Positions 1 to 64,000 of a DNA stretch of 64,000 bases are shown here, in pieces. Both the position numbers and the translations under genes were made by a program. A model generated the notes under the pieces. It searched no databases and was not told where the DNA came from. It saw only the letters and a program-made list of their open reading frames with translations. Within the stretch, counting starts at the first letter, position 1, and each line of letters begins with the position of its first letter. Origin of the DNA: Dicyema japonicum (Eukaryota; Animalia; Dicyemida); assembly GCA_011109175.1 (NCBI GenBank), contig RDEW01000032.1, positions 328,656 through 392,655 of the forward strand. The letters are read 5' to 3'.

Positions 1-1024
1 CTATGCCATAATAATGAACATCCATCTAAAACAAAGTGGTATTAGAATACGCAGATAATCTAGACAGCTTCCGAAAATTGCAATCTCGAAAAGAGTGTGG
101 AGAAGTCTAACAGAACGGATCATCCGGGGGTGGAACAAACAACGGGAAGATATAACGTTTTTTATTGATAATGTGTATAATTATTTGTTTTGGTAATTGC
201 AGAATGAAAATACTAAATACACGTAATTCTGAAAACATAGCTTCCGTTCACCAAATCCTACAAGAGTCCCGAATTCTCAACTTTAATAAAAATTACTTAC
301 GAGACATTAACTTAGTTATCATGGATGAAAAATATTTTCACAATCAAAGTCCTCTCGTCGTAAAATTCAGACGTCGTGCTATTTTAGTACCAGTAAACGT
401 CCCTACATAATCTTTCGTCCCTCATTATATCGTTTACAATGAAGGATTCAGTTTACCAGCTAAAGATTCCTCAATTACTTGATTTAAAAATTGTAGAACT
501 TGAATAACCAATTATGATGGTTCGCATACGATTGTTCTATAACAACAGTCCATATACTTTTTTAAGACTAAAAAATCCCTTATTTATTGCCCTTGGATCA
601 TTGATTAAAGAAAAAGAGTCCTAACAAGTGATTCAAGTTTCCAAGGTAGGATTAAATAGCATCTTTTCCAAACGCTCGTTCATTTATGAAATTCTTCATG
701 TTTAATAGAATAAAGATAGATCCTTTTCATATGCCGACCGATGACTGGGGTCTCCTTGGATTGGTGGATCTTATGAAAAATCTCTCATCGAACTGTTATC
801 GTAACTTTATCTGTAACAAATCATATTTACAATTTTTAAGTAAATTTTTTTTAAAATTAAATTGAAAGACTTTTTTAATATATTTGTTTAAATTGCAATA
901 TTTTCATACAAATATGCTTTTTTAGAATAAATTTCATTTTTTAGTTTCACTAATTACTCAAACAACACAGATTTGGAATAAAGTGACTTTGGCGAAGTGG
1001 CAGCTCTTTGGACATATCCTATGA
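1..1024 (+). CDS. 3' part of an unidentified multi-exon protein-coding gene (runs off window start)
   Basis: Long near-open reading with indels; terminal exons read DPFHMPTDDWGLLGLVDLMKNLSSNCY|LSLITQTTQIWNKVTLAKWQLFGHIL-stop across a 144-nt AT-rich GT-AG intron (801-944). No family recognised. Confidence 0.4.
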
Positions 1025-1039
1025 CTTACGGAAATGGCA

Positions 1040-1230
1040 CCGGCCAATCAGGCCGTGGAATCATACTTTTTTGTATTAAACAAAACAACGTATCGAGGTC
1101 GACAAAGAACTCTCTTGCATAGGAAAAACTGAAAACATTAGAGGATCTGGATGAGCGGTTGCTAGAAAGAGGATGGAAGCGACTTACAGCGCGTATCCAG
1201 ACTCCATGGCAAAAGTGGAATCTCAATTAA
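1040..1230 (+). mobile_element. RTE-clade LINE 3' remnant
   Basis: Translates to NQAVESYFF...YRGRQRTLL...LEDLDERLLERGWKRLTARIQ, resembling the RTE ORF C-terminus and the copy at 14690-15125. Confidence 0.5.
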
Positions 1231-1239
1231 TAGTCTCGG

Positions 1240-1375
1240 ACAAAATCCTAGTGGTTCCTGGTTCGAATCTCGCTGCTGTAAATTCCAGGTGACGAGTAGT
1301 TCCCTTCAGAACCGAATCGTCTACAAGGACTCACTGGAAGAAACTATAAGTATTATGGCTTTCGCGAAAGATGAG
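1240..1375 (+). mobile_element. Truncated tRNA-headed SINE (family A related)
   Basis: B-box-like GGTTCGAATCTC, tgacgagt core and tail motif actata..tattatggct.tcg.gaaa shared with 17640-17795 and 37149-37466. Confidence 0.4.
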
Positions 1376-3299
1376 CGAGCAGTGTATCGTAGATCGGTCC
1401 TAAAGAAGAATACCCCGATAAATTTCTTTTGTTGCATTCGTGGATGAACTAGCGTTTCATGGTTGGTACAATGAAGATCAAGCAGCAGGGTCCGGGAATT
1501 AATTAAAGCTGGGATCACTTAATTAGTGTTTTAACATCTTTATTGGTGATCTTGGTGTTCTCAAATAAATAAATAGTTTCGGGTTTTCAATTATAATTCT
1601 CAGGCTGGTGATTCAGTGGCTTGGATGTCATTTCACTACTAATACTGCGTTGGTTCGATATCCAACACTAGCGACATGGTTTTAGATTTCTCTTCATTTC
1701 CTGTTCTTTATCTCACCGTGTTCTAGTAGAGTGGTATAAAGCGATCCATAATTCTCATGTGACGCCCAGTCGTTATGTAGCAAATTTGCTTTCACTTACC
1801 CCACTGAATAGATTCTAACAACATAAAGGACCAGGTATTCTTCCTTTTCCGCTGGTTTCGGATGAACTTGTGTGATATTAACAAGTCTTTGTTTCTTTGA
1901 TCGTGGAAATCAGAAATATTTAATTTGTTGACTATTAACTTCTTTCTTGATGCACTATGAGTTAATTATTAAATTATAACCACTAATAATTTTTTAATTC
2001 GATTTAAAAAATCAAATATTTATTTAATTCTATTTAATTAAAATTTATTTATTGTACAACTTGACTGGAGAGTTCCCACATCTGCAAGGAATTTACGTCT
2101 TCTACATTTATGCTGGTTTTGGACAGGCTTGTGTGACGTGGAGGGACTCTGTTTATGTGAGAGTGGGAACTGATTTACTCATTTAGTTGTTAACTGTTAA
2201 CTTCTTCCTCGGTGTATCCAGGAATTAATAAAAAACCTTCCAGCCACAAGTTCACTTACAATCACCACCTAAAATCTCAGGAAATATAATATAGGGAGAT
2301 CAATCAGAAAAATATATCTCAAGAATTAAAGCATTGTGACCAGTTGAGGTTATTGATTGGAAGGTCGAGGTGATGACGTACCTATTGTACGAAATGTCTA
2401 ATTTGTTTAGTGATGTGTAATCTTTTGATTTCCTTATTGCTAGCATGGACGAGGTGACTGGTGCAGTAGACAACCTATCTCTGAACAAACGAAAGACATG
2501 TCGAGTTCAAAAAGTGATTTAAATCCATATTGCTAAATTTCTTAACATTTTCTTTATCTTAGATTAGTGACCTCACGTTTTTTTGAACATGTCAATACTG
2601 GGAACTAACATGAGACTTACATTATGCCAAGATCATGGCACAACACATCCACAATAAACACAATGGGTTAGCTTTAGTTAAAGCAGGAAGAACCTGTGTA
2701 GAGTTTGCTGATACATCATCAACAATACGGTCTTGAGTCTCCTGCACTCACTAAAGGAATGCCGATCATCTTCAGGACAAGAAGAACGAAAACCTTAGAG
2801 TCGGTGTTTTTTGCAGACCAATCCAGTAATCTGACAATTATAGCGGAAATTAAGACATATCTTCCATCTTCCTGATTCTTCGGCATGTTGTCAAAGTATC
2901 AGAAGTTCCCAGATAAAGTAGGAAATGTATTCCAAAAGACTTTTCAAAAAATAGAGAAAATACGGAATAAAAAAGTAGCTCACAAACGCTACTGAATTAT
3001 CGGTTGTTTATTGAGAACAGCTTATTGAGGGAATTTCCTTACGAAAAGTTTGTTTACAATTTCGCGAGCAGCTACCCTAACTTTAATATTTTTGGAAAGT
3101 TGTTTTATCTTTTCTCTTTAATCATTGTTTTTATAATCCTATTTCATTTTTGTTGCATAACGACAGAGTGAGAATTTTACTTTCTTTTTTAACAAGCATT
3201 ATTATTATTTCAAACTAAAATATCTTATAAGTGCTTAATTGAGAACGAATGCTACATCCATCTTAAAAGATTAGGATATATCCTGAAATTCAGTTAGCA

Positions 3300-6531: not shown

Positions 6532-6619
6532 TTATTTAATAATGCCGCCAATTCTTATTAAATATTTAATTTATTTTAATTAATAAAAGTCATTAAATAA
6601 ATAAAAAAATTTAAAAGGC

Positions 6620-7237
6620 AATTTGGTTTGGTGATTTTTGTGAGATTTCGTTAACTTTCTGAGAGAAAGCCGCTTCCGCTCTAAATAGTAGCCTCATTCG
6701 GTAAGACTTCTTTGAGTGGTTCCTTACTTGCTAGAGTAAAACTAGCATCCATTTGTGCTACGTGATGTCGACCACGTGGAAATTTCTTTTAAGACCTAGT
6801 TGGTTTGAAACAAATACTTGATGTTGTTACCACATGGGCAGAAATTATCTTAGAGTATGTACATCTACCATGAAGTGACCGATTGATGGTAGCATCGGTA
6901 TTGTTTGCCAGAGGTAATAAAAGCGCCGCGGAAGATTTTTCTGACTCTCCGTGAGCCAGTTCTCCATTATCCTGGCGTTGATCCGGTTCAGGTTATTTGC
7001 ATTCTTTCTATAGCGTTCCAGATGACCTGATCTGGAAAAACCAAACAAAAACGTCTGCATAGAAAAGATAAACATATTATCGGATTCAGGAGTCAAGAGA
7101 TCGGCCAGAAAAAAGTTAAACAGAAAGGATTTAACGGAGATCTTTGAGGGACTCCGTTGGGGAGGATACGTGAGATGGATTTCAGATTTCTGAGGTATAC
7201 ATTTGCGTCCACTTATTACATCGGTATCTAAATACAT
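6620..7237 (-). CDS. Unidentified protein-coding gene, convergent with TMC
   Basis: ATG-initiated 130-aa ORF just downstream of an AT island, followed by a plausible 20-nt intron (gtagatgtacatactctaag) and further coding-like sequence. Confidence 0.45.
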
Positions 7238-7699
7238 TGGCGTCTCTAAAATATATACTATTTAAATAAATAAAAATAAATAAAATTAGCAAAAAACTGT
7301 GAAGAATTTTAATCAAACTGAAGAAGCAATATGGATTTTCAGGCACAAGTAGACCATTTGGTTCTTTCCTTGGATTAATTAATTATGACTGTTTGTGTTG
7401 GGGCTACTAAGACGACATACTAATGAATTCTAGAATTGAAAATGATTTTTTTTCGTATGCATAAGAAGTAAGAATATTCGAATCTGCGAATATGAATTCA
7501 AACCCATTGGTTACGAAATTCTCCTATTAAAAGCTACTTGTAAATTTTTCGTATATTTGAAGATAAAATATTTGAACAGAATGCTTGAGTAATAAATACC
7601 AATTTTTAATTTGAAGATACAGTAATATTCCTCGAATTATTGTTCAGTGTTTATATATGTTTCATGTATTTGTTTTTCATTAGAACTCTGTTTACCGAT

Positions 7700-8600: not shown

Positions 8601-9279
8601 AAGTAGAAATCATAATGACCGCCCTAAAAAATAGAACTTCAATAATGAAGACTAATACTCATTCAGATAGTGAAATAATGAAATTGATCTTGCAAGGTAT
8701 AATATCGACAGAAAGTACCAAAATTACAGAAAAATTTAAATTTTTGAATTTTTGTTAGTCTTTGAAGTAAAATTTAAAATTACGCTAATAATTCAAAACT
8801 GTCTAAGCTTTTTTTATTTCCAAAATTTATTTATTAACTTTTAGTTATATAAAGGATCTTCTATACTGATGAGTATCATAGGATAGCCAAATATTGAGTA
8901 TTCATTTTAACCTTGTAAGCAAGATGCTATGGTATTTTGGTGGGTCATTTGAAATTTGATTTCAGAACAAAGAAGTAGAAATGTCAACCAACAATTAGTG
9001 ATAAAAAATTAAGTTTCAATACATATTATGGCAATGCGACTTTGAAAATGTATTAATTCCAAAAAAGTATATTATTTTTTTGAATATATAAAATGAAGTA
9101 AAACAATAATGCGCAGATTAACATGAAGCAGACATTTCGCTTATTGAAAGAGAAAATTGATGAGTGAATATTTTGGAAGAAAATAGCAAATTATTTTTTT
9201 AATATCTGCGTTTTTAAAAATGTCATATATTAATGTTTCAAATAGATTTTTCAATGTTGAAATGTATTTGTATCTCATT

Positions 9280-10150: not shown

Positions 10151-11933
10151 GTTAGTTGGATGTTCACTATCTGTTGACGGCTTCTATTTAAAGGCATTTG
10201 AGGACGATAATAGGGAAATCGCAGAGTTTTCCTCAATAAACCTGGAATCAATTTTCTTTGAAGATCTAATCTCAGAAAATATTAACTTGGCTAGGAACCA
10301 ATAATTGAGATATCTATGGGTGAAAATTTTCTGGGACTGAAGAGACCAATAAGCATTCTTCTCATGGCTGAGACAAGCTAAGGGTCTTCTTAGTCTCCTA
10401 TCTTCACGTCGAACATGCAAAACCTCACTTCGCCTACATAAAGAGAAGTCACATTAGGCAGATGTAGGCACTTAACCTAAAGACGAATATCACTAATGTA
10501 TTAATGGGTTTGTATAAACGAGAGAGAACACCGCCATGACCTCATACCACATCAATTGGGAGTTCTTGGAGAGGAGCAGATTTTAACGAAGTTTAGGCAT
10601 GCTTGATTGTTTCCTTGTAATTAAAAATGTTACACCTTAGATGGTCAATGTGGCCTTTAAGGTATCAAAAAAAACCGAACATGATTATGATCTCAAGTTA
10701 GTTATAAATGGTTCATAAACCTGATTGAGACTCTTCAGTATTTTGACGCGAATCTAAAGCTTGAAGGTCTGTAATCTCTCTATTTTTGGATCGTCGCTAA
10801 CTGGAAAACATTGGGCTTACTTGGCTGCCATCTAATCTGCTTGATTTGTTCATTATTTAAGATTATGGAGCTTAAGTCTCCAAGAAGTTATCTGGTCTTG
10901 TTGAGGTACAAAATTTTTTAGAAAAATTATTTGGCTGTACAGACCGTTGATGGTTGTAATTATTATTATTATCATACCACGTTTTTATTGATGTCAATTT
11001 TTATTTAAATTTTTATATTCCACGTAAAAGTTTCAAAAATTAATTTAAATAAAAATAATTTTAGTTGTTATTCTAAATGAGTTAAATTTATTTAAGAGAA
11101 ACATCACCCTAGAGTCATACAGTCGCCCTGACTGCGTGGCTATCCTTCTCAGGATGGCGAGCTAGATGCCCTTTAGAATAAAGATGGATACACCATCATC
11201 AGCAGTAATTCCCACTATATCTAGACAACTCAAGCACGATTTATTATTAATGTCTGCCCTCGTCTGTTTCCTGAATACATACTAATAATATTAAAATATC
11301 GTCTTAATTTTGGATCACATCGATTGTTAGTGAATTCTTAGAATTCAAGAAGAACATAGATATAATTGATGATGTTGTCGTGAATACTTGAAGAGTAACT
11401 AGCACTATGCATATATATATAGATTAGCGACTATTGTGGGCGGAGATAGTAAAGCGATTAAATACTAGGCAAAGACGGTTCTAATCTCATTTGAGTGGTA
11501 GAAAACTCTAATCCCCAGTACATAAAAACCAATTATTTATTTAACACCCAAGACCACGGTAAAACCAAACTAACTATCACGTGATCCCGATGCCCTCCAA
11601 TGTAAGTATTCTGGTCCCCCGTTGATTTCTGCGACATCATATTTATCTAATTGATCTCTGGGTCATCCACCTTTTATGTCACTTTGTCAACAGCCATCGG
11701 TTTTTATCATTTGAAGTGGTGGGAGTAAGTAATAAAATAACTAAGTGATCGCAGGCCAACAAGGTGAGGTAAACCTATTGGAATAAGAACTTAACCGCTT
11801 TCCATTAAAAAAGTGAGTCTTTTTGTTCTCGGCTGGTTTTTAAAGTACGTAATAAGGATATACTAGAAGGTGCTTCCTAGGTCGTCCCACGTTGGGGATT
11901 CTCGTGTCGTTTGAATAGAAGTAATATTAAAAA

Positions 11934-11977: not shown

Positions 11978-12899
11978 CCTTTTCAGTAATCTCCCAACTA
12001 CATAGTTGAGGTTACGTCAAATCAGACTACAAAAGTTGCGATACTAGACTAAATAACACGGATTGTAGACCTCCACGTCATGCTTTTGTTAAATCACTTA
12101 CTCATAAGAGTTTTCTTTAATTGAATGCAAGTCCTCGTTGTTACATAACTTATCCGTATGAATTGAGGCAGTCACTTTCCACAGTGTTGTGCAACTCCTC
12201 TCATGTCGTTGAGATGTCTTGACAAAGGTTGTATCCTTGATTTAAAAAGCAAGGCTATATCCACCGTTGATTTCCATGTTCCGAATCCACTCCTTGGTAG
12301 ATTCAATGTAACTAATGCCAAAACTTATAAAGAATTAGAAGCGTAGCTGTCCACGTGTAAAATAGAACATTTCTTTGGGAACATTAAGCAAATTTTGAAG
12401 TAGACGTATTTGAGATCAGCATCAATGCTAACAAAGAGCGACTTGTATTAGTCCACATAAACGTGGACCAATCTAATTAAAGTATTCTTCCATCGTAATG
12501 TTTAAATGTGTACCCATTTCCATTCATAGTATGTCTCTAAAAAAGCCTCCATCAAGTCAGTAATCTCTAAGCTCAACGGACCAGTGGAAAATACCACATA
12601 GAGCTTTTAAAAGCAAATTAGTGCGATCAATGTCCTGAGGTGCCTCAGTCATCACTCCTCAATATGATTACGATGCCTCTAATCGTTATTTCCTTTTTAG
12701 ACACCTACTTCCTAACCAAGTCCCCTGCAATTAACAAAAAGTTGATACTTTGTTCATGAGATGAATAGAGGAAGTACATTTTGTTAACTCCTTCACTCAG
12801 CTGAAACTGTTATCGATAAAAATTGTGAAATATTTTAAATGCATTAATTTTATAAATTGATTATTTATTAAAAATAGTAAATTAGTCATTTCAAATTTG

Positions 12900-13080
12900 T
12901 GTTCCTGTTTAGGCCTCGTGGCGGCATGTGGTGCTATGAGGCTAGTTGGTCATAAATTATTTTCCTTCCCTCCGATGGCGTCATTGGATACATCTTACTG
13001 AGAGACGCCCAATCCCTGACCAGGCATCAAGAGGATCCAACTATTCCTTCCCCGGGGACAATGTCGTTACCTGGAGACAA
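12900..13080 (+). mobile_element. Short dispersed repeat (SINE family B body)
   Basis: gcgtcattggatacatcttactgagagacgccc matches the minus-strand copy at 52430-52620 (gcgtcattggatccacctaactcaggagcccc). Confidence 0.4.
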
Positions 13081-13517: not shown

Positions 13518-14689
13518 ACCACTGTTATTCCCTGTCAACGCCCTGTATACCCAAAATAACTTCACTGTAAATATCCTCGACTGGACACTTTGGTAGTACG
13601 TAGACATAATAAAACAGATTACTTTTGATTACAACAAAACGGAAGTACCACCAAACAACGACTTCTAATATTTTTGGAGGGTTTATTGGTTTCCAAGGAT
13701 AAATGAATATGAAGAAATATGAATTTTCCACCAAATGGTGATACCAAAAATATAGTTATCCAGGGCAAAGGGACAAATGAATAACAAGAAATTGTAGGAG
13801 TGACGAGGAAGATATAAACCAGGTAACAGCGTAATTTTGAAGCATGATATTAATGACAATCCCAAAACAGAAGATTATACGACAACATTGACATATAATT
13901 ATTACACAAACAATCAAGTCGACATTAGTAAAATTTCTTCATAATTCAAAGCACATGAAGAATTGATGAATCAAAGATCTACTATATAAAAGTTTGAAAC
14001 ATCTTGCATTTTCAATAATGAAGAAATAATAATAAATACAATAACTAAAAAGCAACAACAAACGACCACAAGAGGCGATGATAACGTGTATAATAAACTT
14101 GATGAATGGTGGTTGACCATTTTAAAAAATAAATTTTGATTAATATAATTAATAAAATTATATTTTTTATACTCATTTTTGATTTTTTAACTTTACACGT
14201 TTGGATTTAAAAAAACAGTCCCACCCATGAGCGACGAGTCCATCTGCACGACACAGTAGTTAAAAGGGATCCTCTTATCTTTCTCCCTGACCAAATCCTC
14301 TGATGAAGATTGCATTATGAAAAATATTCCGCTAAAAAATGAAGTGATATCCACGACGGTAAGACGTGGGACAAAAATGGAAGAGGCCATTGCTTGTAAT
14401 GGTCTATTGGAGGATGGATTTTGTCAACACAAGCAGACGTTCTCTCTTGGCTACCTTTCTTGGATTAATTGGTTATGACTGTTTGTGTTAGGCATAACAC
14501 AGATTGTAGACACGTGGTTAATAAACACATGAAATATAAAAAGAAGGTATTTCAGTAAAGGAAATAAGAAGTATATAAAGAAGCATACAAGATAGATTTC
14601 GCGTATGTCTTTGAAGGAAATTGAAAATCATTTAATCAACCCCACTGTATTACTTTTTGAAAGGATATTCACACTACAGCTTTCTATTT

Positions 14690-15125
14690 AGTTAGTTAGG
14701 TAAAGCACATTCCCATTACCAGTAAACACTGTTTATGGTTTCCTTTGTTCCATGCTTTTCGATTATCCTTTCCTTCAGTCTTTTCCATCTTTTCGTTGTC
14801 GTGCTCGTTTCCTGATTTCTTCCAGATCGTCTGCATCCATCAGTCGGCCACCGATAACTGCGTAAACTTCCGAGAGTGTCCTTGAAAGACAACTTCTTGA
14901 ACGTACTCTGAATGCAGGAGATACAGTATGGCCGAAACAATCTTACGTCTGTTCATCCATAGGTAGAATATGTCCAAAAAAGCGCCAGCGTGCTTCAAGT
15001 ACGATTAGACTCATTGGTCCACAATCAGTCAGTTTTTATAATTTATTGTTTGAGATTTACTTTGGACAAGAGTATCCAAGGAGTTTTCTTGTTAGCTTCT
15101 GTGAAAAGAGTCAAGCTTTCTATTT
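14690..15125 (-). mobile_element. RTE-clade LINE 3' end with (CTAA)n tail
   Basis: LDSFHR...ISNNKL...MSLIVLEARWRFFGHILPMDE...ARQRKRWKRL matches the RTE C-terminus; followed by gaatgtgcttt and ctaactaactaa. Confidence 0.8.
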
Positions 15126-18500: not shown

Positions 18501-18709
18501 AAATAGCTGCATGCTTTGTCATTTAAATTATTTAAAATAAATTTATTTTTTAATATATTTTAATTAAAAAAATCGCACATTGAATTTTCTTTGAAATCAA
18601 GTAATGATTGAGGATTTCATAGCCGCCGAATTTCATGGAATGATGATTTAGTCAGATCTAGGACAAATGTTTTGAAGATCTACGATTGCCAAAAAAGAGC
18701 CTTCAAAAT

Positions 18710-21682: not shown

Positions 21683-21689
21683 TATTTTT

Positions 21690-21850
21690 CTATAAACATT
21701 TTATTAAAAAAATTAAAAATTAATAATAAAAAAATAGAATTAAAAATAACAAAAATCAAATATTAATTGCACTTAAATTTTTTATTGCTAGAAAAATTAA
21801 ATTTAATTGACAAGCAAAATGCACGTTTTTTATTCAAATATTTTCTGTTG
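21690..21850. promoter_or_regulatory. A/T island immediately upstream of the NitFhit start (putative promoter/NDR)
   Basis: Almost pure A/T with poly-A runs adjoining the ATG; function inferred. Confidence 0.45.
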
Positions 21851-38560: not shown

Positions 38561-38564
38561 AATT

Positions 38565-41004: not shown

Positions 41005-41050
41005 TGTAACAGGCTGCCCATAGGTAACTCTTGGCCCATGTGACATATTA
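41005..41050 (+). repeat. Solo TGTAACAGGCTGCCCAT terminal repeat
   Basis: Matches the reverse complement of 39697-39742; no partner found downstream. Confidence 0.7.
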
Positions 41051-47516: not shown

Positions 47517-49345
47517 ATGGAAAGTTTGTCGGACAAAAACGAATCAAATAACGCTGACATTATCAAAAAGATTCAAATACCTGAAGGAAAAGTCAAAAAT
47601 ACTATTATTTTATTAGGGAATCACTTTAAAAAAGTTTATGGCTTTTTTTGGGCCGGGATTCCTTGTGAGTATTGCATACCTTGATCCGGGAAACATGGAA
47701 TCAGACCTTAGAACCGCAACAGTTGCTGGTTATAAAGTATATTTGTTATTCTTTTTAAAGTTGCTGTGGCTTTTGTTAATTTCTACAATTCTTGGTATTT
47801 TGCTTCAAAGACTTGCTCTTCGCCTCGGAGTCGTGACTGGTAACAGTTTATCTCAGAATTGTCGAACCTGTTTGCCTCGTGTTTCCAACGTTGTAACCTG
47901 GGTTATGGTGGAAATTGCCATTGTCGCCTCTGATATGCAAGAAGTAATCGGTACCTCGATTGCCATCTATATTCTTTCCCAACAAAAGTAAAAATCAAAT
48001 TTATTTTAGAATTCCCTTGTTTGCTGGAGTTTTGATAACAATTTTCGACACATTCATTTTCCTGCTGATAGATCGCTACGGATTCAGAAAATTAGAGTTC
48101 ATTTTCGCCTTTGGAATACTTATTATGGCTGCGATGTTCGGCTACCTTGTAATATTTAATATAATTTCTCAGTATGTGTTATCTGCCCCCGACCAGGGGA
48201 AGTTGATGAAAGGAATGTTCGCCCCCATGTGTGAGAACTGTTCTTACGACGCTCTTGTCCAGGCTGTTGGGATTATAGGGGCTGTGATAATGCCACATAA
48301 TATTTACCTCCACTCTTCTCTCACTGAGGTTACTTGGGTTAGTAGTTTAGACGAGAAAAATTGACAGAACTGACAAATCAAAAATCAAAGAAGCGAATTT
48401 TCTGTTTTTCACAGAAAGTTGTATAATCCTGCTGGTCTCCTTCATAATCAATTTGTTCGTTATGGCAACCTTCGCATCTGCATTTTACACTGCATCTGAG
48501 AGTTCCCAATCAATCGTTGAATTTTGCTATTAAAGTGAATAGTATAACATGTGTGTCGCCAGAAATATCTCGAATGGAATTATTTTCAAGAATATGACTG
48601 ATGCTTCTGATATGAATATTTTTTCGGGGGTTAGGGTTTTAGCTGATGTCGTAGTCCATCTTCTTGGGCTGCAAGTATGGCATAGCGACTACCTATATCT
48701 GGGCGATTGGCATTCTGGCTGCAGGACAGACTTCTACGATGACTGGGACATACACAGGTCAGTTCGTGATGCAGGTGTTACCTTTTAAAGACATCTTGCT
48801 AATTAGGGATTTTTGGGAATCACATGGAAGCCATGGAAGCGATTAATAGTAACACGAACAATTGCAATTGGCCCAACAATTGTAGTCGCAGTATTCCAAG
48901 GGTTGGACAAACTGACAATTTTCAACGACCTTTTAAACGTGTTGATGAGTATTTTGCTTCCATTCGCTCTGCTACCAGTCATTGCCTTCACAAGCTCAAC
49001 CTCCATAATGGGAAAGGACTTTGTCAACTCCAAGTTTGTAAATAAAATAAAATAGATTATCTAAAATATTATACATATTTTTAATATTTCTAATAATTGC
49101 CATCAACAATTATTTAATCGTGGATATTATCAAACAGTACACCACTGGACATATTATCTACCAAATTCTCATCATTTTGCTAATCGTCATATACTTTGTT
49201 ATTGTGATTTTCATAGTTTATTTATTATTTATTTTAGAGTATTAGTTTTCTAGCAATATCAGAAAGTGTCCATTTGGGGAAATACAGTCACTATTTTATA
49301 AAAGATGTTGGAGAAAATGAAGAAGAGAGATCATTAATTGAGTGA
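47517..49345 (+). CDS. NRAMP: NRAMP/SLC11 divalent metal transporter
   Basis: [72 protein letters not shown]; short GT-AG introns throughout. Confidence 0.97.
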
Positions 49346-51325: not shown

Positions 51326-52429
51326 CTGGTCACGTGTTACCGAATATGGCAGCTGCTGCAGTTTGTCCAGTTGTACATGTTTTCGGTATCATTCACGTGG
51401 GGCTTCATTTTCACGTTTAGGGGAACAAGTTAAATCCCCTAGTGTCACACACAGGCATACCAAACAGGGGAGACAGGTACTGGGAAACTGAATGGGTGGG
51501 TTCTGAAGGGATCGACAGCAAATGTCCCAGACACGTTACTCGACTGGGAGACGTCAAAGTTATTCAAGGACTGACTGAGTTTAAAATATTAGCGGGGACG
51601 AAAGCGAATGCTGGGTGGGCTTCTATTATAACAAAAGCATACAGGTGGTACAAATGCGATTTGACCGTACAGGGAAAAATTTCTATGGTAGTTTTTAATG
51701 CTGCCTCAAACTTGGAATTGAAGGTCTAGTCGCAACAAAAAAGTTTTAAGTTCCGTATAGCGTCATGGAATCAACTAACTCAAGAAACACAAAGTCTCTA
51801 GTCGGCATCCAAAAAGGATTCTCTCTTCCCTACTTCAATAGAAAGGTTCACACAATATTGAGTGGAAGGTAATAGTAGAACGTCCTACTCCGGCTTGGTA
51901 ACTTGATAAAACCTGTTAAAGATATTTTCTTTTTCCAGTTATCTTCTAATTTCTTTAACAAAATTAGACAGTTTAAATATCCATTGCTTTCTATCAGTTA
52001 ATTAAATTTCATGTCACAAGCACATACTTTGAAGTTTATGAAAATTAAAATTTGTCTTATAAATTAAATTTAAAAAATTAAAATAAAAAACTTACATGTC
52101 AAGTAAAATAATAAATGGTTAATAGCAAATATAAAAATAAACTGTCTAAAAGTGGGACGAGAACAAGGCGTCGAAGCAAGATGAGGTCAGAAACCAACAC
52201 TAAGAGGTAGTGGGTATTTTTGTTAACAACTGTAATTCCAAGACGTTTTCGGTACCAACACCACTCACTGTATCTTACAGCTCAGACGAAATTGCACTTG
52301 AGAGTACACGGAAAAGATCTCTGGTGACAGGTCTGACCTAACCTGAAGTCGTGACGAACCAAAGATGTCCCTGACCCCAGATTATTTAGCCACCTCCTTT
52401 CAGAAAAGTCCGGATATATCGGAATAGGT

Positions 52430-54350: not shown

Positions 54351-54821
54351 TTACTATGGAATAAATTTGATTTGATTTGATTCAGAGAAGAGAAGATGTG
54401 ACTCGTCTTCTAGTCGTAAAGAAAGCATGATGGCCAGAGTGGAGATTGTCCGATCTTGTATAGAAATAAATGTAAATATATGGTCACAACAACGTAGGTG
54501 TGCCAAGTGGACACGAACTTCCTGTGGTACGGAAGCGTCGCTACCGTCAATAATAAGTGGAATAAGTCCCAGAAGCTTGTTGCTACCATTGCTTCTGATG
54601 GTTTGGTTCATATACAGCCATGGATTGTTTACTGTCGTGATTGGCAGGCTCAGTCTCTGGGATGGTTCGTAGAATCAGAATTAAATCGCTCATAAGAAGA
54701 TAAAGACTGTAAAAAAATAAGATCTTGAAACTAAAATGCAATTTAATTTATATAATTATTTTAATTTTCTATTTTAATATTTTTAAATAAATTAGTTTTA
54801 AGTAAACGTGGTTTTTGTGTC

Positions 54822-56430: not shown

Positions 56431-57684
56431 AAATATTAAAATAAGCTTTAAAATAGATTTTGAGAAAAATGTCATTCTGAGATTCGAACTGTAATATAAA
56501 TGTAAAATCAAAAAAGCAAAAACCCTCGCTCTTAATGTTTCCTTTTATATAAGGTGAGGGTTCCAAAAGTCTAAAGAATTAAAACAGTTTATAAGGTTAA
56601 GAGATGACCCTTAGACAAGTGGGTTATTAATTTTTAAATATCATAATTACATATCGAAATATATTACATGAGGAAGGAAATAAAATAATTCTATTAATTA
56701 TCAGTAAATTTATTAAATACTTAAAAAATTAAATTTAAAAAATATTTAAAAGTTAGCGCCATTTTTTGATTGTTTTTTGTGTGAATTTATTACATCACAT
56801 TCGAGGAATTCTCTTTCTCTAATCATGGGAATAGCTTGGATAAAGTAACTATAAAGAAGATGAAATTTTCAAAATCTTCCATGAGTTGTTGGTAGCAATG
56901 CTCGGTGTCTCTTCACAATCTTTCTGAATATATTTTACCAACTCTCTTTAACCTAAGCGCTGCATTGTCAATAGATATCTTTGCTCTTCTCTGTACATGT
57001 TTTCGTCGCTCAAGAATGCTGCCAACAAAATCATTGAAGCAAGTTCCAAGTCCACAATCGCTTGATTCCAATCCGTCTTAAGATTTCGTCCGCAAACCCA
57101 AATTGAGTGAACCGAAAAATTCTCATGCGGAGCAAGTCTTTATTAAAGGCCTCAGAAGATGTACGCTGTGTGTGCACTTGTTCATAGGGCACCTTTAAAT
57201 TTGGATGATTCTAGTTCCACAATACCAGTAAACCACCGGCTGTAGAGCATGCCTGTGTTGAGTGGAGATTCGCGCTCTAAATATAATCAAAATACGGGTT
57301 GGTGTCATGTCAATTAAAAGTATAAGGCACGATTCTGTCTTTAACGCCATTTTCCTCCTCTTTGTCGGTCTAGGATCACTTGGTTAGCTAAGAACTCTCT
57401 TTCTTTCCTTTATCCCTTGGATCTTGAAACATTAACGACGAAATAGCTGTATAATGAAGAAAAGGAATTCCATAAGGATATTTTACCTTGAACTTAATCG
57501 CAGATTTTACAAATACGGAAATGTTGTTGCCTTGAATGATTCGTCGACATGCCAACGTTTTGGGAAAATATTGGACGCAAAAGAAGTGGGGACAAATATT
57601 CTTATAATGTTGGTGGTTAGTCAGTTACGTAGTTTCGGGCTCATTAACTTGTAGGAGACCAGCGGCTATTAGCTAGAACGTTTG

Positions 57685-58671: not shown

Positions 58672-59975
58672 CAGGGGTCGGAAACCGTGGCTCTGAGTTT
58701 TTTTATGTGGCTTTTTCAATTATCGCAAAGATTACTTACATCTCCAATAAAAACATTTTCAAAACAGTGTTCTTCCAAGTTGTTATCATGTATATTTTAT
58801 ATGCTATTTTATATTAAATTGTTATTTTTATTTAACTTATTACATATTTTTCATATATTAATTTTAAAAATCTTACTCGCATAATCATAAATTCTGTTTG
58901 TGGCTATTCAACTATGTCTATAAATTTAAATTTATTGAACCAAAAACATCGTCATAACAAGAATTAAAAATTAATGTGATTCCCGGCTCCCTCAGCAGTC
59001 TTCACATGCTCGGACTTGAAGGAAATGCCGGCCAGGGGGAACTCCTCGGAAAGTTAATGTCCAATGGTTCTTTTGGATATAATTTAGGATTATATGTGCC
59101 GCCACCAGAGATGGTGAACTCACGACGCACCCTGGAGCCAAATGGGAAGAGGAGGAACAGGAACTCAAACATATAATCTACAATTTATGTAGCCACATAG
59201 CACCACACTAACTTTGGTGTCACGTGGAAAATAAGTATAAAACGGATAGAAAACGTCTTTCTCAATTTCAATGGACTGAGACTCTTGCCCTTATATTTGA
59301 TCACTTCCAAAATGTCTCTTTTGCCACGAAACATTCAACCAGAACAAAAATTCAACTCTGGAGAGACGCTTAAATCCAAAGAAAGGTGATTTTTTAGGAA
59401 AATATCGAATTGCGAGCACGAATACTATCTTTGAATTCCAAAAAATATTAAAATTGAAAGTTCAACATTATTGAAAGCAGTCTGCCAGGACTATTAAGAT
59501 TGTAGCTTCATCGTCAGTTATGATGTTGCAAAAAAGGGAAACCATTCACAGATGGTGAATACATCAAATCCTGTTTTTTGTTTTGGACTTGCCGGTGCTA
59601 TAGTTGGCAGATTCATGTCATGTATTGAAAAAGTTTATTCCAGATTCATATCATATCGTCCTCACGATATTCGGGTCTATTTATTTGTGTGAGCAGGCGT
59701 CTTCATATATGATTTGATAAAACCAAATAAAGGAGTCTTATGCAAATTGGAATCCTGTCTTGTTAAAAATATTACTGATGCAAATTTGGAGTCTTGTCAG
59801 AAATGACAAATTACTATTCAGACATAACAATATTGGCGAAGGTAATGCAAAGTCAATTAAATATAATTTTTTATGTTTTATTATTTTAAAAAGTGTTATG
59901 TTTTAGTTTTTTAATTTTTTTAATTGCCAAAAAACAAAAAATTGGCTTTTTGGCTTAAAAGGTTGACGACCCCTG
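58672..59975 (+). mobile_element. Non-autonomous hAT element with both TIRs
   Basis: CAGGGGTCGGAAACC at 58672 and GGTTGACGACCCCTG ending 59975; flanks ccatatta / ccattact (degenerate TSD); internal KPFTDGEYIKSCF; 3' part aligns with 46790-47106. Confidence 0.85.
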
Positions 59976-62539
59976 CCATTACTGTTATTTATGGTTATTT
60001 TTAGAGGCAATGACTACTTAGATCCAAAAAAGAGACAAGTCATAAGAGACATGTAAGGGAATAATATACTATTTATAGATTCGACCTAAATTTACTCTTT
60101 TTCGTAAGCATTATAAATCTAAAGATTTTCTCATCAAGAAACCAAATTATACGGGGATCGCCGATTTATACAAAGAAACTGTCAAAATCAGTGAAATAAT
60201 GGTTAACATCATTAGATGGGCTTTTATAAGTTTATAATATTTGACTACTGTGTTAAAGTCGATGAAGTCATACTTTTTAGCGTGGAAGTCGTGTACTTAA
60301 CGATTTCTACATTCGACGATGACTCTAAGCAAAATGATAGCCTCTGATAATTCACAACAGCAAATTCTAAGTTGAATCTGTACGAAATTTGAGTCTAGGA
60401 TTATCTTTTTAACTCATATCCTTCTTATTCAAATGGCACGTGTTATCAGTTAACAAGATGTTATTATTGTAAGATAAAAAGCTTATACATATCAAAATAT
60501 TATAATACAGGTTCACACTACTTTAACCGAGAAGCATGTGTTATCATGTTAACGGATTCGTTTATTTAAAGATTGTAGGAAATCTCTGTGAGGGTATAAA
60601 TGTGATCTTTAGCTATCCAGGTGACTCCGAATCGACTTTTCAATTTCCTTTAGCTTGAGGATTAGTACACAACCGAGATTTGATCAACAAATTGTCAATA
60701 TAACGTCTGGTATCCTCGGAGCCAGCTCTGACCATGAACTCTTTTTTCAAAGATATGAAAACTCGGGTACAGTAGCGATTGGGAGAATAAGATTAGAAAC
60801 TTTGCTGAATGTCTCTCCACAATCAACTGTCGATTCATCTCCCAATTCTAAAATGTCTTCAATTGTAATGCCTGTTTGAGCACGTGCTGTCCGAAATCCT
60901 GAAAACTGTCAACGGAATTAATTTCGTGTCTATGATTAAAGTACTTCTAGTCTATGACTCTTGGGACAGTGTAAATTCGTGACGACAACCGATCTACTGA
61001 ACATAATACTTACGACACCCTCAAATTCCTCGAAAAGTCTCTTTTCTTTGGTTTCGATCTTTCAAACGAAAGAAACTGGAAGTTGACAAGAAACTAACTC
61101 TCAAAAAACATAGACTCCAGATATCCGTCACTATTTCTTATGCGGAGGGTAAATTCTCTTTGGCAATTAACATTAAGCAATACTAGAGGGATTTTTGTCA
61201 ATAAAGTCAAAAATTCATATGTTTTTTAAAATTGTTTAAAACTTATAAAAAATGATTTTTAATTAAAAATATTATTTAAATCAAAAGCTATAAAGTCAAA
61301 ATTTTGGGTAATGTCAAAAAAAATTAAAATCTAATTTTTCAAGTAAATAAAGTCAAAACATTTATTGATTTTTATTGTTTAATTTTTAGGGTTTTTGAAT
61401 AAAATGCTAACGTTCAAATTCGGAAGGTCATTGAATAGGTTGAGACTGATATTAGAAAATATCTTTGCGAGTTTTCTATTAACTCACAATTTTCTAACAA
61501 CAGATTTTATTGAATCTTTGTCTAATAAACATTAAAAACTAACAGGTCTATCATTTCACAGTTGCTACTGTAAAAATATCTGATTTTCTCATTCCATGCT
61601 AAAGTGTAGAAAAAATATCCCAAGGGTAACTTGAAAGAAGCTATTTTTGAGTTTTTTACATGCATTTATTATAGAGTTTGAAAAATCGGTTTGATCTACG
61701 AAATCGACATAAATATATTTGAACACACAAATAAATTTCTTCCATAAAAGATTGAAATTGGCTCTACGCAAAAAAAATTGTGTTTAAATAACGATTTATG
61801 CGGAATTAAGAAGTATACGGAATCTAGATTTTTGTATTATGTTTTATCTATTAAAAATGGAAAAACAACAAATTTATACATGCATTTACGTCTATTTGAA
61901 AAATATTTTTCCTCGTTATCTATTTAGTAAAGATTATTATTATTGATAAAGAAAATGAACTTCCTAAAAAAGAGATCTTCGGATGGGTGCTTCAAGGAAG
62001 TCTAAGATGTTCGATGGAGATACCTTATCCCACATAATAAAGAATCGAAAATCCTCAAGTCAATAATTTCAATGATCTGTCCAAAGACAGATTCGTCCTA
62101 GTTCCTGATAATTCGACGAGATTAGAACACACTCTATCAAATGCTTCCTCGCTTTGAAACTTTAGATATACTATGTCTCCCTTGTCCATTTTCTCTCTAA
62201 AGGTGGAATAAGAGGTTACAACCACCTTAATTAAATTAAGATCTTTCGTTCAATAAAAAATACACCACTTACTCTAATAAAACAAAAATAAGTCAATATC
62301 ATTACTCAATATTTGTCCCCCGTCACTGATGAGTAACTCTCATTCTAATCTGCGACTCCTGAAATGAAAAACTGTACATCAAAGGAGGGTGACTATTTCT
62401 TGCAGGAAATGTGAACCAATTTAATATCATTTAACATAAAAAACCCAAAGAGTAGATGTTAACCATCCAAGTGATATCAATATCTTTCAGAAGGCAGTTA
62501 GTTTTTGGTATTCTTCCAAGGTTTCAGTGCCTTCTTGTA

Positions 62540-63330
62540 TCTTAGCAGTTATTCCTTGGTAGACCCAGGATGCGCAAGCGTAGTCGACAGTTGCCTTCAG
62601 AAACTAATGTAGACAAAAACAAATTGGACAGGGAAGTTAACATCACCTTCAGACAGCTGAGTAACCTTGTTTGTAAAAACATTCTACATGTGATGACAAA
62701 ACAATAGAACAGATCAAAGGTCACATACATTTCTGGAAACACTGGATGTTAGTTCACTCCTAATCATGTCTCAAGGTTCGCGAGAAAAGACTGTGACAGT
62801 CTTGGCCACTTAAGTAATCTGTTTACATGCGATGACAAAGTCATATGCATAAGTCAGTAGTATTAAATCTCATGGAGAGGAAATCTAAAAAGCAATTTAT
62901 AGAAATGATATCTCTGAGGAATTCTGAAATCAAGATTTTGGAGGACCAACATATATTTTTCTTCTGCGTCACCTGATCATATTCACAATCCATAGCTTTA
63001 TTTTGGGTTGATTCCGACGTTGAATAATTTCTTAGTGTGAATCTTTTTGACACAGAATCAAGGCGGTAATGACGTCAATCGTAATGATGCAACATGTTGA
63101 TTTTGTCCAACAACGAGCAGAAATTGTATACCTCTTTGAACCACAAGCATATTCTATAGCAAAAAAATGGTATGCCGGTAAAATTCGCATATGCAGTCTT
63201 CCGGACGTGGGTCTTCGTTATTTAAGAAAGTCCTCGAGACAGAGTCAAACGCTTTTTGAAAACTATTTAAAACATTGTTGTACGTGTATGGAGATAATTT
63301 TTGAAAAATTAATTTATTAACCCCGGATAC
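62540..63330 (-). mobile_element. Decayed LINE RT
   Basis: FQKAFDSVSRTFL and LLTYAYDFVI (YADD-like) with many stops. Confidence 0.65.
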
Positions 63331-63569
63331 ACCGAGAAGGAAGTTAAAATTAAACAACTAATTAAGTGTATCCAGTTTTCACTTCTAGAGTTCATCCGGA
63401 ACCAGCTTACAGTTGTGAAAACCCTTACAGTGGAGTGGGGAAGAACAAATGATCCTTTTTCGTGCCAGCCTAGCACTAAGAGCCGGCCGAAAAAAAACTG
63501 AAAAATTTAACCAATTGATCATGCATCACCACATGGCGCCAGACGGCGCTTTCGAAATATCTCCGTTAG

Positions 63570-63960
63570 AGTCCAGTGGGCTGTCCTATGGCATTTAAAC
63601 AACCTTAATAGAAACACCAACTGAAATGCGATCTAACAAAATATGACATTTCTGTCTGCTGTCTACAACATCCATAAACGATCGTACAATGCACAGAACT
63701 GTTTGACAAATTCCACCTTTTAACCCTCCCGACATAATGGTCTCGAATTTGCAGTCCATCAAGACCTGATTGACTGTGTTACAAGAGTGCGGGCAGCATC
63801 TGACATTATAATGGAAATGGCAGGCGACCTGGACTACCTAAGAGAACCAGGGCGCAACAGAAGATCATGGCCGAGGCTGACAGAGAGGATGATTCGGATT
63901 TCGGCACAAGGAAAATTATTACTTTTATGTTTTATCGGGAGTGCTTTTCAATAATACTAC
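63570..63960 (+). mobile_element. Mini-RTE type A, second copy
   Basis: Colinear with 18000-18430 including the deletion junction (acaagagtg...attataatggaaatggc) and 3' gggagtgctttt. Confidence 0.85.
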
Positions 63961-64000
63961 GTTGTCAAATGAACCCATCAAGGCTATTGTATCATTTGCA

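What the first reader, a model, noticed from the sequence alone, without database searches (positions are those of the whole stretch)
1..64000. Quasi-periodic near-pure A/T islands roughly every 1-1.5 kb, accommodated in rare long introns
Sharp islands of about 60-200 bp (up to about 400 at 47300), almost GC-free and rich in A/T runs, recur at roughly 880, 2010, 3200, 6590, 7270, 8780, 11030, 12860, 14150, 15150, 17500, 18550, 21750, 23800, 24390, 26980, 27930, 30170, 30750, 32270, 33260, 38600, 39950, 40950, 42250, 43160, 44070, 44890, 47300, 50290, 52090, 53095, 54770, 56720, 58850, 59900 and 61300 (positions by eye). They are not restricted to promoters: they punctuate transposon debris, and inside genes they occupy the longest introns (801-944, 24363-24424, 33173-33348, probably 30071-30270). 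Most other introns are 20-26 nt. This suggests a spacing-constrained chromatin element (nucleosome-free anchors, origins, holocentric or loop attachment sites, or breakage signals) that overrides intron compaction. Gaps of about 2-2.5 kb occur over some genes (TMC, ECD, MIC60 3' half), so the period is not strict. The function is inference.
Basis: partly seen in the sequence, partly recalled or inferred. Interest (0 to 1): 0.75.

Follow-up and report, generated by a model that had tools for sequence, protein, structure and literature searches.

The report
AT-rich islands, no spacing lattice
The short, almost G/C-free islands in this tiny-intron animal genome (Dicyema japonicum by its assembly statistics) are real, but they are not evenly spaced: they abut gene start codons, fill a few exceptional long introns, and are copied around inside transposons.

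Summary
The window is G000:C246:328656-392655. G000 matches the published Dicyema japonicum assembly (67.5 Mb, 377 scaffolds, GC 36.7%).

**Confirmed.** An objective call (50-nt windows, GC <=12%) finds 36 islands, against 1-6 expected from Markov simulations.

**Not confirmed: quasi-periodic spacing.**
- No spectral or Rayleigh peak.
- Window CV is 0.64-0.77, against 0.87 for a random null.
- 190 gaps over 264 kb decay monotonically: median 846 bp, CV 1.18, maximum 13.4 kb.

**What the islands are.**
1. 5' blocks. All five homology-anchored genes (NitFhit, NDUFS1, Nramp, RPL23A, CPSF73) start in an island or within 12 nt of one. None of the four in the window has an island at its 3' end; CPSF73 has one about 200 nt beyond its last modelled coding exon.
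2. Rare long introns, proven by residue continuity with solved structures: NDUFS1 176 nt; CPSF73 101 and 84 nt.
3. Parts of repeats, for example a TIR transposon with at least 39 other copies that carries two islands 1 kb apart.

Island GC (12%) lies below the substitution equilibrium I estimated (about 24-29%). The spacing-constrained chromatin reading is not supported. Earlier follow-up in this scan reached a similar verdict on another stretch of this genome.

The parts
806..904 (+).
   Evidence: GT..AG and the flanking frames are compatible. No Pfam support for the flanking exons. Unverified.
1960..2066 (.). AT island, unassigned; a repeat begins at its right edge (2064-2235)
6547..6625 (.). 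AT island, unassigned
7242..7313 (.). AT island, unassigned; weak ORF reading leftward from ATG 7237
8730..8853 (.). Two adjacent AT islands (8730-8782 and 8804-8853), unassigned
9041..9111 (.).
10996..11097 (.). AT island, unassigned
12815..12900 (.). AT island, unassigned; a repeat starts just to its right (12912)
14110..14198 (.). AT island at the junction of two repeat families (13661-14167 and 14143-14689)
15117..15184 (.). AT island inside a duplicated segment (copy on C328, 85% identical, spans it)
18508..18592 (-). AT island 78 nt upstream of the ATG (18429) of a 132-aa ORF on the - strand
   Evidence: The ORF has no Pfam match.
21674..21808 (-). 5' island of NitFhit; the ATG at 21682 lies in its edge
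   Evidence: Sequence. CN_hydrolase match, E 2e-18..
23749..23854 (+).
   Evidence: Pfam gave nothing.
24353..24445 (+). Island in the one long intron of that gene (24363-24424 or 24264-24424)
   Evidence: Model only. GC 0.08 over 24363-24424.
27358..27411 (.).
30118..30217 (-). AT island 26 nt upstream of ATG 30092 of a 99-aa ORF on the - strand; not an intron by my reading
32170..32365 (+). 5' island of NDUFS1; the start codon at 32374 is 9 nt past its edge
   Evidence: The exon from 32542 aligns from residue 52 of precursor chains, so the start must lie upstream of it. Sequence and frames. Spliced path from 32374.
33173..33348 (+). 176-nt intron of NDUFS1, which holds island 33215-33343
   Evidence: The upstream exon aligns to residues 130-215 of 5xtb_M, which puts its last codon at 216. 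The downstream exon aligns from residue 219 at its second codon, so it starts at 218. One split codon lies between. GC 0.17. No other copy in the genome.
38554..38651 (.). AT island, unassigned
39696..41051 (+). TIR DNA transposon copy that carries islands 39928-39995 and 40921-40991
   Evidence: At least 39 other copies, 91-98% identical, span both islands. Inverted termini are visible. An ATG at 40029 lies 34 nt after the first island.
41157..41207 (.).
42210..42292 (+). AT island at the start (ATG 42282 or 42469) of an ORF ending at 42846
   Evidence: Only a weak DUF7201 match.
43137..43192 (.). AT island, unassigned
44046..44095 (.). AT island inside the repeat 43268-44336
44868..44924 (.). 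AT island, unassigned
46973..47035 (.).
47262..47530 (+). 5' island of Nramp; the ATG at 47517 lies inside it
   Evidence: Sequence. Nramp Pfam matches.. A 96%-identical copy on C345 spans the locus.
49031..49100 (+). Not spacer DNA: a 22-nt intron (49034-49055) followed by an AT-rich open frame, probably the last membrane helix of Nramp
   Evidence: Reading. The Nramp Pfam profile ends just upstream, at position 352 of 357. The coding status of the AT-rich part is inferred.
52024..52117 (.). AT island, unassigned
54710..54810 (+). 5' island of RPL23A; the ATG at 54822 is 12 nt past its edge. A LINE fragment (RT) ends about 70 nt to its left.
   Evidence: Ribosomal_L23eN and L23 matches. RVT_1 match..
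56674..56759 (.). AT island, unassigned
58672..59979 (.). Repeated element that carries islands 58780-58878 and 59842-59927
   Evidence: A copy on C2 (74% identical) spans both; further partial copies exist.
61200..61366 (.). AT island inside a repeat (61184-61597), with internal direct repeats

Best explanation
The islands are not one spaced chromatin element. They are the AT-rich non-coding blocks of individual transcription units and repeats in Dicyema japonicum.

Shown:
- Every gene I could anchor by homology begins in an island or within 12 nt of one. None of the four in the window has an island at its 3' end.
- The same kind of sequence makes up the few introns that escaped miniaturisation, and there the island edges match the intron edges to within a few bases.
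- Many islands are internal parts of transposons and duplicated segments. They are copied with them and diverge at the same rate as their flanks.
- Island spacing therefore follows the sizes of genes and repeat pieces. It has no period.

Inferred:
- The 5' islands are core promoters plus very short leaders. Runs of A and T disfavour nucleosomes, so these blocks would stay open for RNA polymerase II, as in other AT-rich compact genomes.
- Transposon-borne islands are the elements' own promoter or subterminal regions, or relics of them.
- The extreme composition is kept or produced by more than point mutation: selection for AT richness at promoters, and slippage growth elsewhere.
For: Islands are real: 36 observed against 0.9-6.1 expected.

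Start codons:
- NitFhit: ATG 21682, inside island 21674-21808.
- NDUFS1: ATG 32374, 9 nt after island 32170-32365.
- Nramp: ATG 47517, inside island 47262-47530.
- RPL23A: ATG 54822, 12 nt after island 54710-54810.
- CPSF73: ATG L019:4996, at the edge of island L019:4992-5072.
- A random strand-aware position lies within 60 nt of an island 9% of the time, so five out of five is about 6e-6.
- Four further modelled ORFs start 0-80 nt from islands.

3' ends: the nearest downstream island is 1.4-3.6 kb away for the window genes whose stop I could place.

Introns: residue continuity with solved structures across 33173-33348, L019:4486-4586 and L019:3757-3840. Their GC is 0.10-0.17, against 0.33 for NDUFS1's short introns.

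Repeats:
- Islands are spanned by repeat alignments as often as control DNA (26.5% against 23.7%).
- They diverge like their flanks (identity 0.848 against 0.843).
- A TIR family with at least 39 other copies carries two islands 1 kb apart. Other elements carry 58780 with 59842, and 61200.

No lattice.

Composition: substitution equilibrium GC is 0.24 (95% CI 0.20-0.28) or 0.29. Both exceed island GC of 0.12.
Against: - No transcript or chromatin data could be reached, so promoter activity and start sites are inferred from position alone.
- Only about 8-10 of the window's 36 islands sit at a recognisable gene start.
- Across 331 island flanks, coding potential reading away from an island equals that reading towards it.
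- ORFs starting at island edges are not enriched over controls, although that control is biased by internal ATGs in genes.
- No shared motif rises above a first-order Markov expectation, so nothing sequence-specific marks the islands as promoters.
- My gene models are crude, and several long 'introns' they call are false joins.
- Islands in repeats evolve neutrally. This fits relics but gives no sign of function there.
Confidence: 0.6

Rival explanations
1. The islands are a neutral by-product. Any DNA free of constraint (spacers, long introns, dead parts of repeats) drifts AT-rich under AT-biased mutation. AT-rich low-complexity DNA then grows by replication slippage until it meets constrained sequence, which gives sharp edges. 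Islands sit next to start codons only because that is where unconstrained DNA borders exons.
For: - Mutation is AT-biased: GC->AT 0.073 per site against AT->GC 0.023 per site in repeat copies.
- There is a modest excess of internal direct repeats in islands: 11 against 4.5 expected at >=12 nt.
- No motif was found.
- Islands in repeats diverge like their flanks.
- Island edges coincide with intron edges.
Against: - Equilibrium GC from substitutions is 0.20-0.29, twice the island GC.
- Most non-coding DNA between islands stays at about 34% GC right up to the island edge.
- The four window genes have an island at the 5' end and none at the 3' end, which a pure 'unconstrained DNA' model does not predict.
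- The slippage signal is weak.
Confidence: 0.25
2. One reading: a spacing-constrained chromatin element (nucleosome-free anchors, origins, loop or holocentric attachment sites, or breakage or excision signals) placed every 1-1.5 kb and strong enough to override intron compaction.
For: - In this window short gaps are scarce: CV 0.64-0.77 against 0.87-0.88 for the null, p 0.03-0.23.
- Islands do occupy long introns.
- Dicyemids are reported to form circular DNAs and rearrange their genome (PMC6543705, citing Noto et al. 2003).
Against: - There is no periodic peak by Rayleigh test or spectrum.
- In 200 kb of the same contig CV is 1.06-1.22. The pooled gaps have no mode at 1-1.5 kb and reach 13.4 kb.
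- The 5.2-kb stretch 33343-38554, which holds the 3' part of NDUFS1, has no island.
- Non-genic islands alone have CV 1.22.
- Two 'lattice points' 1 kb apart belong to one transposon family.
- GT..AG pairs that bridge open frames across islands are no more common than control dinucleotide pairs (33 against 33-44), so intronic islands are exceptions.
- Strand skew keyed to islands is at most about 0.02.
Confidence: 0.04
3. The islands are scars of retrotransposition: decayed poly(A) tails plus AT-rich target sites, so that each transposon fragment ends in an island.
For: - Repeat alignment ends are mildly enriched near islands: 18.6% against 13.7% within 50 nt.
- A LINE fragment ends about 70 nt from the RPL23A island.
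- Several repeats abut islands.
Against: - Most islands have balanced A and T on one strand, unlike tails.
- Islands are spanned by repeat alignments as often as random DNA.
- The young TIR element sits in flanks of ordinary composition. A SINE-like element that another reader noted in a coding exon (s1-406338, not checked here) would also be outside any island.
- Gene 5' islands and intron islands are not explained.
Confidence: 0.05

Closest known systems
AT-rich, poly(dA:dT)-type promoter and intergenic blocks of AT-rich compact genomes (yeast nucleosome-depleted regions; Dictyostelium and Plasmodium spacers) - from general knowledge
   Same: Short, strongly AT-rich blocks directly upstream of coding sequence. 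They are defined by composition and not by a motif, and they contrast sharply with exons.
   Different: Here only 60-270-nt blocks are extreme (12% GC), while the rest of the non-coding DNA is about 34% GC. Most islands have no gene beside them. Many are transposon-borne. Nucleosome depletion is untested.
Two-class intron length distributions with a 'minimal intron' peak (Yu et al. 2002, cited in PMC13644364; dicyemid tiny introns in PMC6736024, PMC6543705, PMC13644364)
   Same: A tight minimal class (mode 22-23 nt here) plus a tail of longer introns.
   Different: The long introns proven here (84, 101, 176 nt) are near-pure A/T from donor to acceptor. I found no mention of 'AT-rich' in the term searches I ran on the three papers. 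Other notes of this scan report long introns with other contents (OGT, hnRNP L, SRSF1, VPS45; unchecked), so AT islands are one kind of long intron and not the rule.
Periodic A/T clusters (PATCs) in C. elegans introns - from general knowledge
   Same: A/T-rich sequence housed in introns of otherwise compact genes.
   Different: PATCs are defined by a roughly 10-bp phasing of A and T runs. No such phasing exists in these islands.
A+T-rich islands that act as replication origins in Schizosaccharomyces pombe, and AT-rich scaffold/matrix attachment regions - from general knowledge
   Same: Compositionally defined AT-rich islands in intergenic DNA.
   Different: Those are hundreds of bases to about 1 kb long and lie many kilobases apart. 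These have a median length of about 80 nt and occur at 0.74 per kb, which is too short and too dense.

Membership tests
Periodic or spacing-constrained genomic element (lattice) | A preferred inter-element distance: a spectral or Rayleigh peak, and CV well below 1 | tested here: not met
No spectral peak rises above noise. CV is 0.64-0.77 in the window but 1.06-1.22 in 200 kb of the same contig. The pooled gaps decay monotonically with CV 1.18.
Periodic or spacing-constrained genomic element (lattice) | Absence of long element-free stretches | tested here: not met
   Gaps of 5.2 kb in the window (33343-38554) and 13.4, 6.9 and 5.3 kb without N elsewhere.
Core promoter / nucleosome-depleted 5' region | Position directly upstream of the start codon of genes, and not at their 3' ends | tested here: met
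   Five of five homology-anchored genes start in an island or within 12 nt of one. The four in the window have no island within 1.4 kb downstream of their modelled ends; CPSF73 has one about 200 nt beyond its last modelled coding exon.
Core promoter / nucleosome-depleted 5' region | Transcription start sites and open chromatin inside the island | not testable with these tools
   No RNA-derived contigs or chromatin data could be reached.
Core promoter / nucleosome-depleted 5' region | Most members lie next to a transcription unit that reads away from them | tested here: inconclusive
   Only about a quarter of the window's islands have a modelled ORF starting at them. In bulk, coding potential away from and towards islands is equal. 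My gene models have low sensitivity.
Spliceosomal intron (for the islands inside genes) | GT..AG borders, and removal restores an uninterrupted conserved protein | tested here: met
   NDUFS1: residue 216, one split codon, then residue 218 of 5xtb_M. CPSF73: residue 113, one split codon, then 115; and residue 312 then 313 of 2i7t_A. Borders read.
PATC-like periodic A/T clusters | About 10-bp phasing of AA/TT | tested here: not met
   AA/TT autocorrelation is flat (within 0.007 of zero) at lags 2-30 over 196 islands.
A single repeated element or sequence family | Shared sequence or motif among islands | tested here: not met
   No 6-mer or 8-mer rises clearly above a first-order Markov expectation. 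Only islands inside copies of the same transposon are homologous.
Retroposon tails / target sites | Strand-asymmetric A-rich sequence at element 3' ends; islands confined to element junctions | tested here: not met
   A and T are balanced in most islands. Islands lie inside repeat alignments as often as control DNA.

The most novel reading that the evidence does not exclude
The near-pure A/T introns of 80-180 nt are a discrete, functionally retained second intron class in an animal that has shrunk its other introns to about 23 nt. They would be intragenic copies of the promoter-type island, acting as nucleosome-free regulatory blocks or internal promoters. More speculatively, islands in general could be the preferred cut or join sites for the circular DNAs reported in dicyemids.
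Probability: 0.12. Interest if true: 0.55.

Novelty: new member of a known kind. Interest (0 to 1): 0.3.

Why it matters
It removes an attractive but unsupported idea, a kilobase-scale chromatin lattice. That idea has been raised repeatedly for this genome by first-stage readers.

It replaces the idea with testable statements:
- In D. japonicum an 80-270-nt block of about 12% GC marks the start of genes. This would help annotate a genome for which only 5,012 genes were predicted.
- The rare long introns include a near-pure A/T kind.
- Island composition lies below what point mutation alone should give.

It also shows that composition-based island calls mix promoters, introns, AT-rich coding sequence and transposon parts.

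Tried and rejected
**Strand asymmetry.** GC and AT skew keyed to islands, as suggested by other readers' notes, amounts to only about +0.016 left and -0.016 right over 196 islands, and nothing in this window.

**Motif search.** Nothing rises above a Markov-1 expectation. The ATTTAAAT-like words that caught my eye are explained by composition.

**10-bp phasing.** None.

**ncRNA in the islands or introns.** Rfam gave 0 hits in the window, and ARAGORN found 0 tRNAs.

**Non-standard genetic code.** This was not needed once tiny introns were recognised.

**Spliced-ORF gene finder.** My dynamic-programming finder was useful for short introns. Its long 'introns' are often false: it joined a LINE to RPL23A and a transposon to a YL1-like gene, and it hid an AT-rich CPSF73 exon.

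**Bulk tests.**
- Genes starting at islands: inconclusive, because the control was biased.
- Islands being introns: no excess over control dinucleotide pairs.

**Gene identities.** Pfam and PDB searches gave no support for TMC, ECD or MIC60. I neither confirm nor deny these names.

**NitFhit paralogue on C19.** It covers only the 3' part of the gene, so it says nothing about the promoter island.

**RNA evidence.** Exact-product look-ups found nothing, and one protein search returned only the octopus host's RPL23A.

**Joined models.** Spliced models were searched exon by exon, by reference.

Full report
**Origin of the window.**
The window is G000:C246:328656-392655, in a genome of 67,542,437 bases in 377 contigs. 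This matches the published Dicyema japonicum assembly: 67.5 Mb, 377 scaffolds, GC 36.7%, 48.9% repeats, 5,012 predicted genes, mean intron 38 bp (PMC6736024). Window GC is 36.5%. Tiny introns with reduced splice signals are already described for this species (PMC6543705; PMC13644364).

**Are the islands real?**
Yes.
- Calling 50-nt windows with GC <=12% and merging neighbours gives 36 islands of 50-269 nt with GC 0.10-0.15.
- Markov order 1, 3 and 5 simulations of the window give 0.9, 2.5 and 6.1 islands.
- GC is back at 0.33-0.34 within the first 100 nt outside an island, so the edges are sharp.
Random positions score 13% and 23%.
Three of the skipped islands lie close to a listed one, and the additions lie in otherwise long gaps, so both choices regularise the list.

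**Is the spacing quasi-periodic?**
No.
- In the window, the coefficient of variation (CV) of centre-to-centre distances is 0.64, 0.68 and 0.77 at thresholds of 10, 12 and 14%.
- Random placement with a 150-nt exclusion gives 0.87 +/- 0.13.
- That means p = 0.03, 0.06 and 0.23 for the objective calls, and p = 0.002 for the hand-picked list.
- A Rayleigh scan over periods of 600-3000 bp is not significant for any objective call (p 0.22-0.69).
- The power spectrum of the GC profile has no peak above noise in the 0.5-4 kb band.
- I fetched the first 200 kb of the same contig (L003-L022). There the CV is 1.06-1.22, so islands are clustered and not regular.
- Pooling 190 N-free gaps over 264 kb gives a median of 846 bp, a CV of 1.18 and a maximum of 13,445 bp. 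Only 29% of gaps fall in 800-1700 bp. The counts per 100 bp fall monotonically from the shortest class, with no mode at 1-1.5 kb.
- Removing the gene-associated islands from the window leaves 25 islands with CV 1.22, against a null of 0.92 +/- 0.16.
- What remains of the impression is a shortage of very short gaps in this particular window. That is what one expects if the units between islands are genes and repeat pieces of finite size.

**Islands at gene starts.**
I identified genes exon by exon, by reference.

| Gene | Evidence for identity | Start codon | Island |
|---|---|---|---|
| NitFhit (- strand) | CN_hydrolase, E 2e-18 | 21682 | inside 21674-21808 |
| Nramp | Pfam, | 47517 | inside 47262-47530 |
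| RPL23A | Pfam, | 54822 | 12 nt after 54710-54810 |
| NDUFS1 | PDB alignments, | 32374 | 9 nt after 32170-32365 |
| CPSF73 (L019, - strand) | PDB alignments, | L019:4996 | edge of L019:4992-5072 |

- For NDUFS1, the exon beginning at 32542 aligns from residue 52 of full-length precursor chains. The start must therefore lie upstream of it. The only spliced open path begins at ATG 32374.
- For CPSF73, a 25-nt intron follows the first exon, and the next exon encodes GAGQEVGRSC, which matches residues 18-27 of the human chain shown.
- A random strand-aware position lies within 60 nt of an island 9% of the time. Five of five therefore has a chance probability of about 6e-6.
- At 3' ends, the nearest downstream island lies 1.4-3.6 kb beyond the modelled ends of the window genes. 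I did not fix the Nramp stop. CPSF73 has an island about 200 nt beyond its last modelled coding exon.
- This agrees with an earlier follow-up on another stretch of this genome (s1-406321).

**Islands in long introns.**
Three cases are proven by continuity of residue numbering against solved structures.

| Gene | Intron | Length | GC | Junction |
|---|---|---|---|---|
| NDUFS1 | 33173-33348 | 176 nt | 0.17 | upstream exon aligned to 215, ends at 216; one split codon; downstream exon aligned from 219 at its 2nd codon, starts at 218 (5xtb_M) |
| CPSF73 | L019:4486-4586 | 101 nt | 0.10 | residue 113, one split codon, residue 115 of 2i7t_A |
| CPSF73 | L019:3757-3840 | 84 nt | 0.155 | residue 312, then residue 313 |

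- The NDUFS1 junction rules out the alternative that the island separates two genes.
- In all three cases the island call coincides with the intron to within a few bases.
- The other introns of these genes are 19-31 nt in my NDUFS1 model and 21-25 nt in CPSF73 as read. NDUFS1's short introns average GC 0.33.
- The NDUFS1 intron has no other copy in the genome, so it is not an insertion of a recognisable repeat.

- 24363-24424 (or 24264-24424) is supported only by my model.
- 801-944 is frame-compatible but has no homology support.
- 30071-30270 looks like a 5' island and not an intron.

Intronic islands are exceptions. Across 196 islands, GT..AG pairs at island edges that join open frames of >=40 codons occur at 33 islands. 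Control dinucleotide pairs do so at 33-44.

Other notes of this scan report long introns of quite different content in OGT, hnRNP L, SRSF1 and VPS45 (unchecked by me). AT islands are thus one kind of long intron, not the rule.

**An island that is not spacer.**
49031-49100 consists of a 22-nt intron (49034-49055) followed by an open, hydrophobic, AT-rich frame. It reads as the last membrane helix of Nramp. The Pfam Nramp profile ends just before it, so the coding status is inferred. Similarly, my model first hid an AT-rich CPSF73 exon inside a false 180-nt 'intron'.

**Islands in repeats.**
- In an all-against-all comparison of the 264 kb, 52 of 196 islands (26.5%) are spanned, with at least 30 nt on each side, by an alignment to another copy. 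The figure for length-matched control segments is 23.7%.
- Within such alignments, islands and their 100-nt flanks diverge equally: identity 0.848 against 0.843, with gap columns 0.036 in both.
- Genome-wide searches give concrete cases.
  - Window 39696-41051 is a copy of an element with inverted termini (visible). At least 39 other copies, 91-98% identical, were scored. Islands 39928-39995 and 40921-40991 both lie inside it, and an ATG follows the first by 34 nt.
  - Window 58672-59979 is a repeated element holding islands 58780 and 59842.
  - Island 46973 is homologous to 59842.
  - 61200, 44046 and 15117 lie in repeats or duplicated segments.
- At least nine of the window's 36 islands travel with repeats. 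Some of the '1-kb spacings' are internal to a single element.
- Repeat alignment ends are only mildly enriched near islands (18.6% against 13.7% within 50 nt). Most islands have balanced A and T. They are therefore not simply retroposon tails or insertion targets.

**Nature of the sequence.**
- No 6-mer or 8-mer stands out against a first-order Markov expectation. AAATAA is mildly enriched (302 against 238).
- There is no 10-bp phasing of AA/TT.
- There is a modest excess of internal direct repeats: 11 islands against 4.5 expected at >=12 nt.
- Strand skew keyed to islands is about +0.016 on the left and -0.016 on the right, and absent in this window.
- From substitutions away from family consensus in ten repeat families, GC->AT is 0.073 per site and AT->GC is 0.023 per site. 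The equilibrium GC is 0.24 (bootstrap 0.20-0.28). Two other families gave 0.29.
- Island GC of 0.12 is about half that. Point mutation alone does not explain the islands. Either composition is selected, or slippage and insertion of A/T-rich sequence adds to it. These estimates rest on small samples.

**Mechanism.**
The best-supported reading (confidence about 0.6) has four parts.
- The 5' islands are core promoters with very short leaders, whose A/T runs keep nucleosomes off. The position is shown; the activity is inferred.
- The same sequence type fills a few long introns.
- Transposons carry their own copies.
- Spacing reflects unit sizes.

The main rival (about 0.25) is that islands are a neutral product of AT-biased mutation plus slippage in any unconstrained DNA. 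The 5'-only placement at the window genes, the 34% GC of the rest of the spacer and the equilibrium estimate argue against it. The neutral divergence inside repeats and the lack of any motif argue for it.

The lattice, origin, anchor or breakage reading is left at about 0.04. Thousands of small circular contigs are reported for a Dicyema species (PMC6543705). I found nothing that links them to islands and could not test it.

**Limits.**
- Only 264 kb of the genome could be read.
- No RNA or chromatin data were reachable.
- My gene models are crude.
- About 15 of the 36 islands remain unassigned.

**Verdict.**
- The scan has raised and followed up the same pattern on other DNA of this genome (s1-406321 and several first-reader notes).
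- What is new here is the homology proof of three AT-island introns, the demonstration that islands ride in transposons, and the equilibrium-GC comparison.

Noticed in passing
window 39696-41051: A young DNA transposon with inverted termini (ATGTCACATGGGC... / ...GCCCATGTGACAT). At least 39 other copies, 91-98% identical, were scored. Most other copies carry an extra 360-600 bp at the point matching window 40337/40338, so this copy is an internally shorter form.
   Followed up: partly
window 47133-49490 (and 49555-50250, 50808-51744): The Nramp locus, including its 5' island, has a 96%-identical copy on contig C345 (102943-105293). Flanking pieces match at 87-90%. This looks like a recent segmental duplication.
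   Followed up: no
window 8238-8485; 63595-63959; 31988-32130; 45989-46665: High-copy short repeats: a roughly 248-bp family at 93-96% identity, a roughly 365-bp family at 82-86%, a roughly 145-bp family at 88-93%, and a roughly 660-bp family at 78-96%. The genome-search tool scored only 39-40 candidates out of 1,000-3,800 per query, so copy numbers are far higher than listed.
   Followed up: no
C246:128657-138658 (L015-L016), - strand: My model gives a 10-kb spliced open reading frame (score 187). It lies inside the longest island-free stretch seen (13.4 kb). I did not identify it.
   Followed up: no
264 kb sample (window + L003-L022): Substitutions in repeat copies are AT-biased: GC->AT 0.073 per site against AT->GC 0.023 per site. 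The implied equilibrium GC is about 0.24, well below the genome's 0.365.
   Followed up: partly
window 20208-21075: The 3' 870 nt of NitFhit has partial copies at 68-81% identity on five other contigs (C19, C9, C13, C329, C88). The C19 copy lacks the 5' part of the gene.
   Followed up: partly
window 20900-21200, - strand: I could not thread a clean reading frame through the middle of the NitFhit gene by eye, and my model skips 21043-21201 as a GC-normal 159-nt 'intron'. This may hide several small introns, a frameshift or an assembly error.
   Followed up: no
196 islands in 264 kb: There is a very weak sign change of GC skew across islands (about +0.016 on the left, -0.016 on the right; roughly 3 standard errors). 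It runs in the direction another reader described as a 'saw-tooth', but it is far too small to see locus by locus and is absent in this window.
   Followed up: partly
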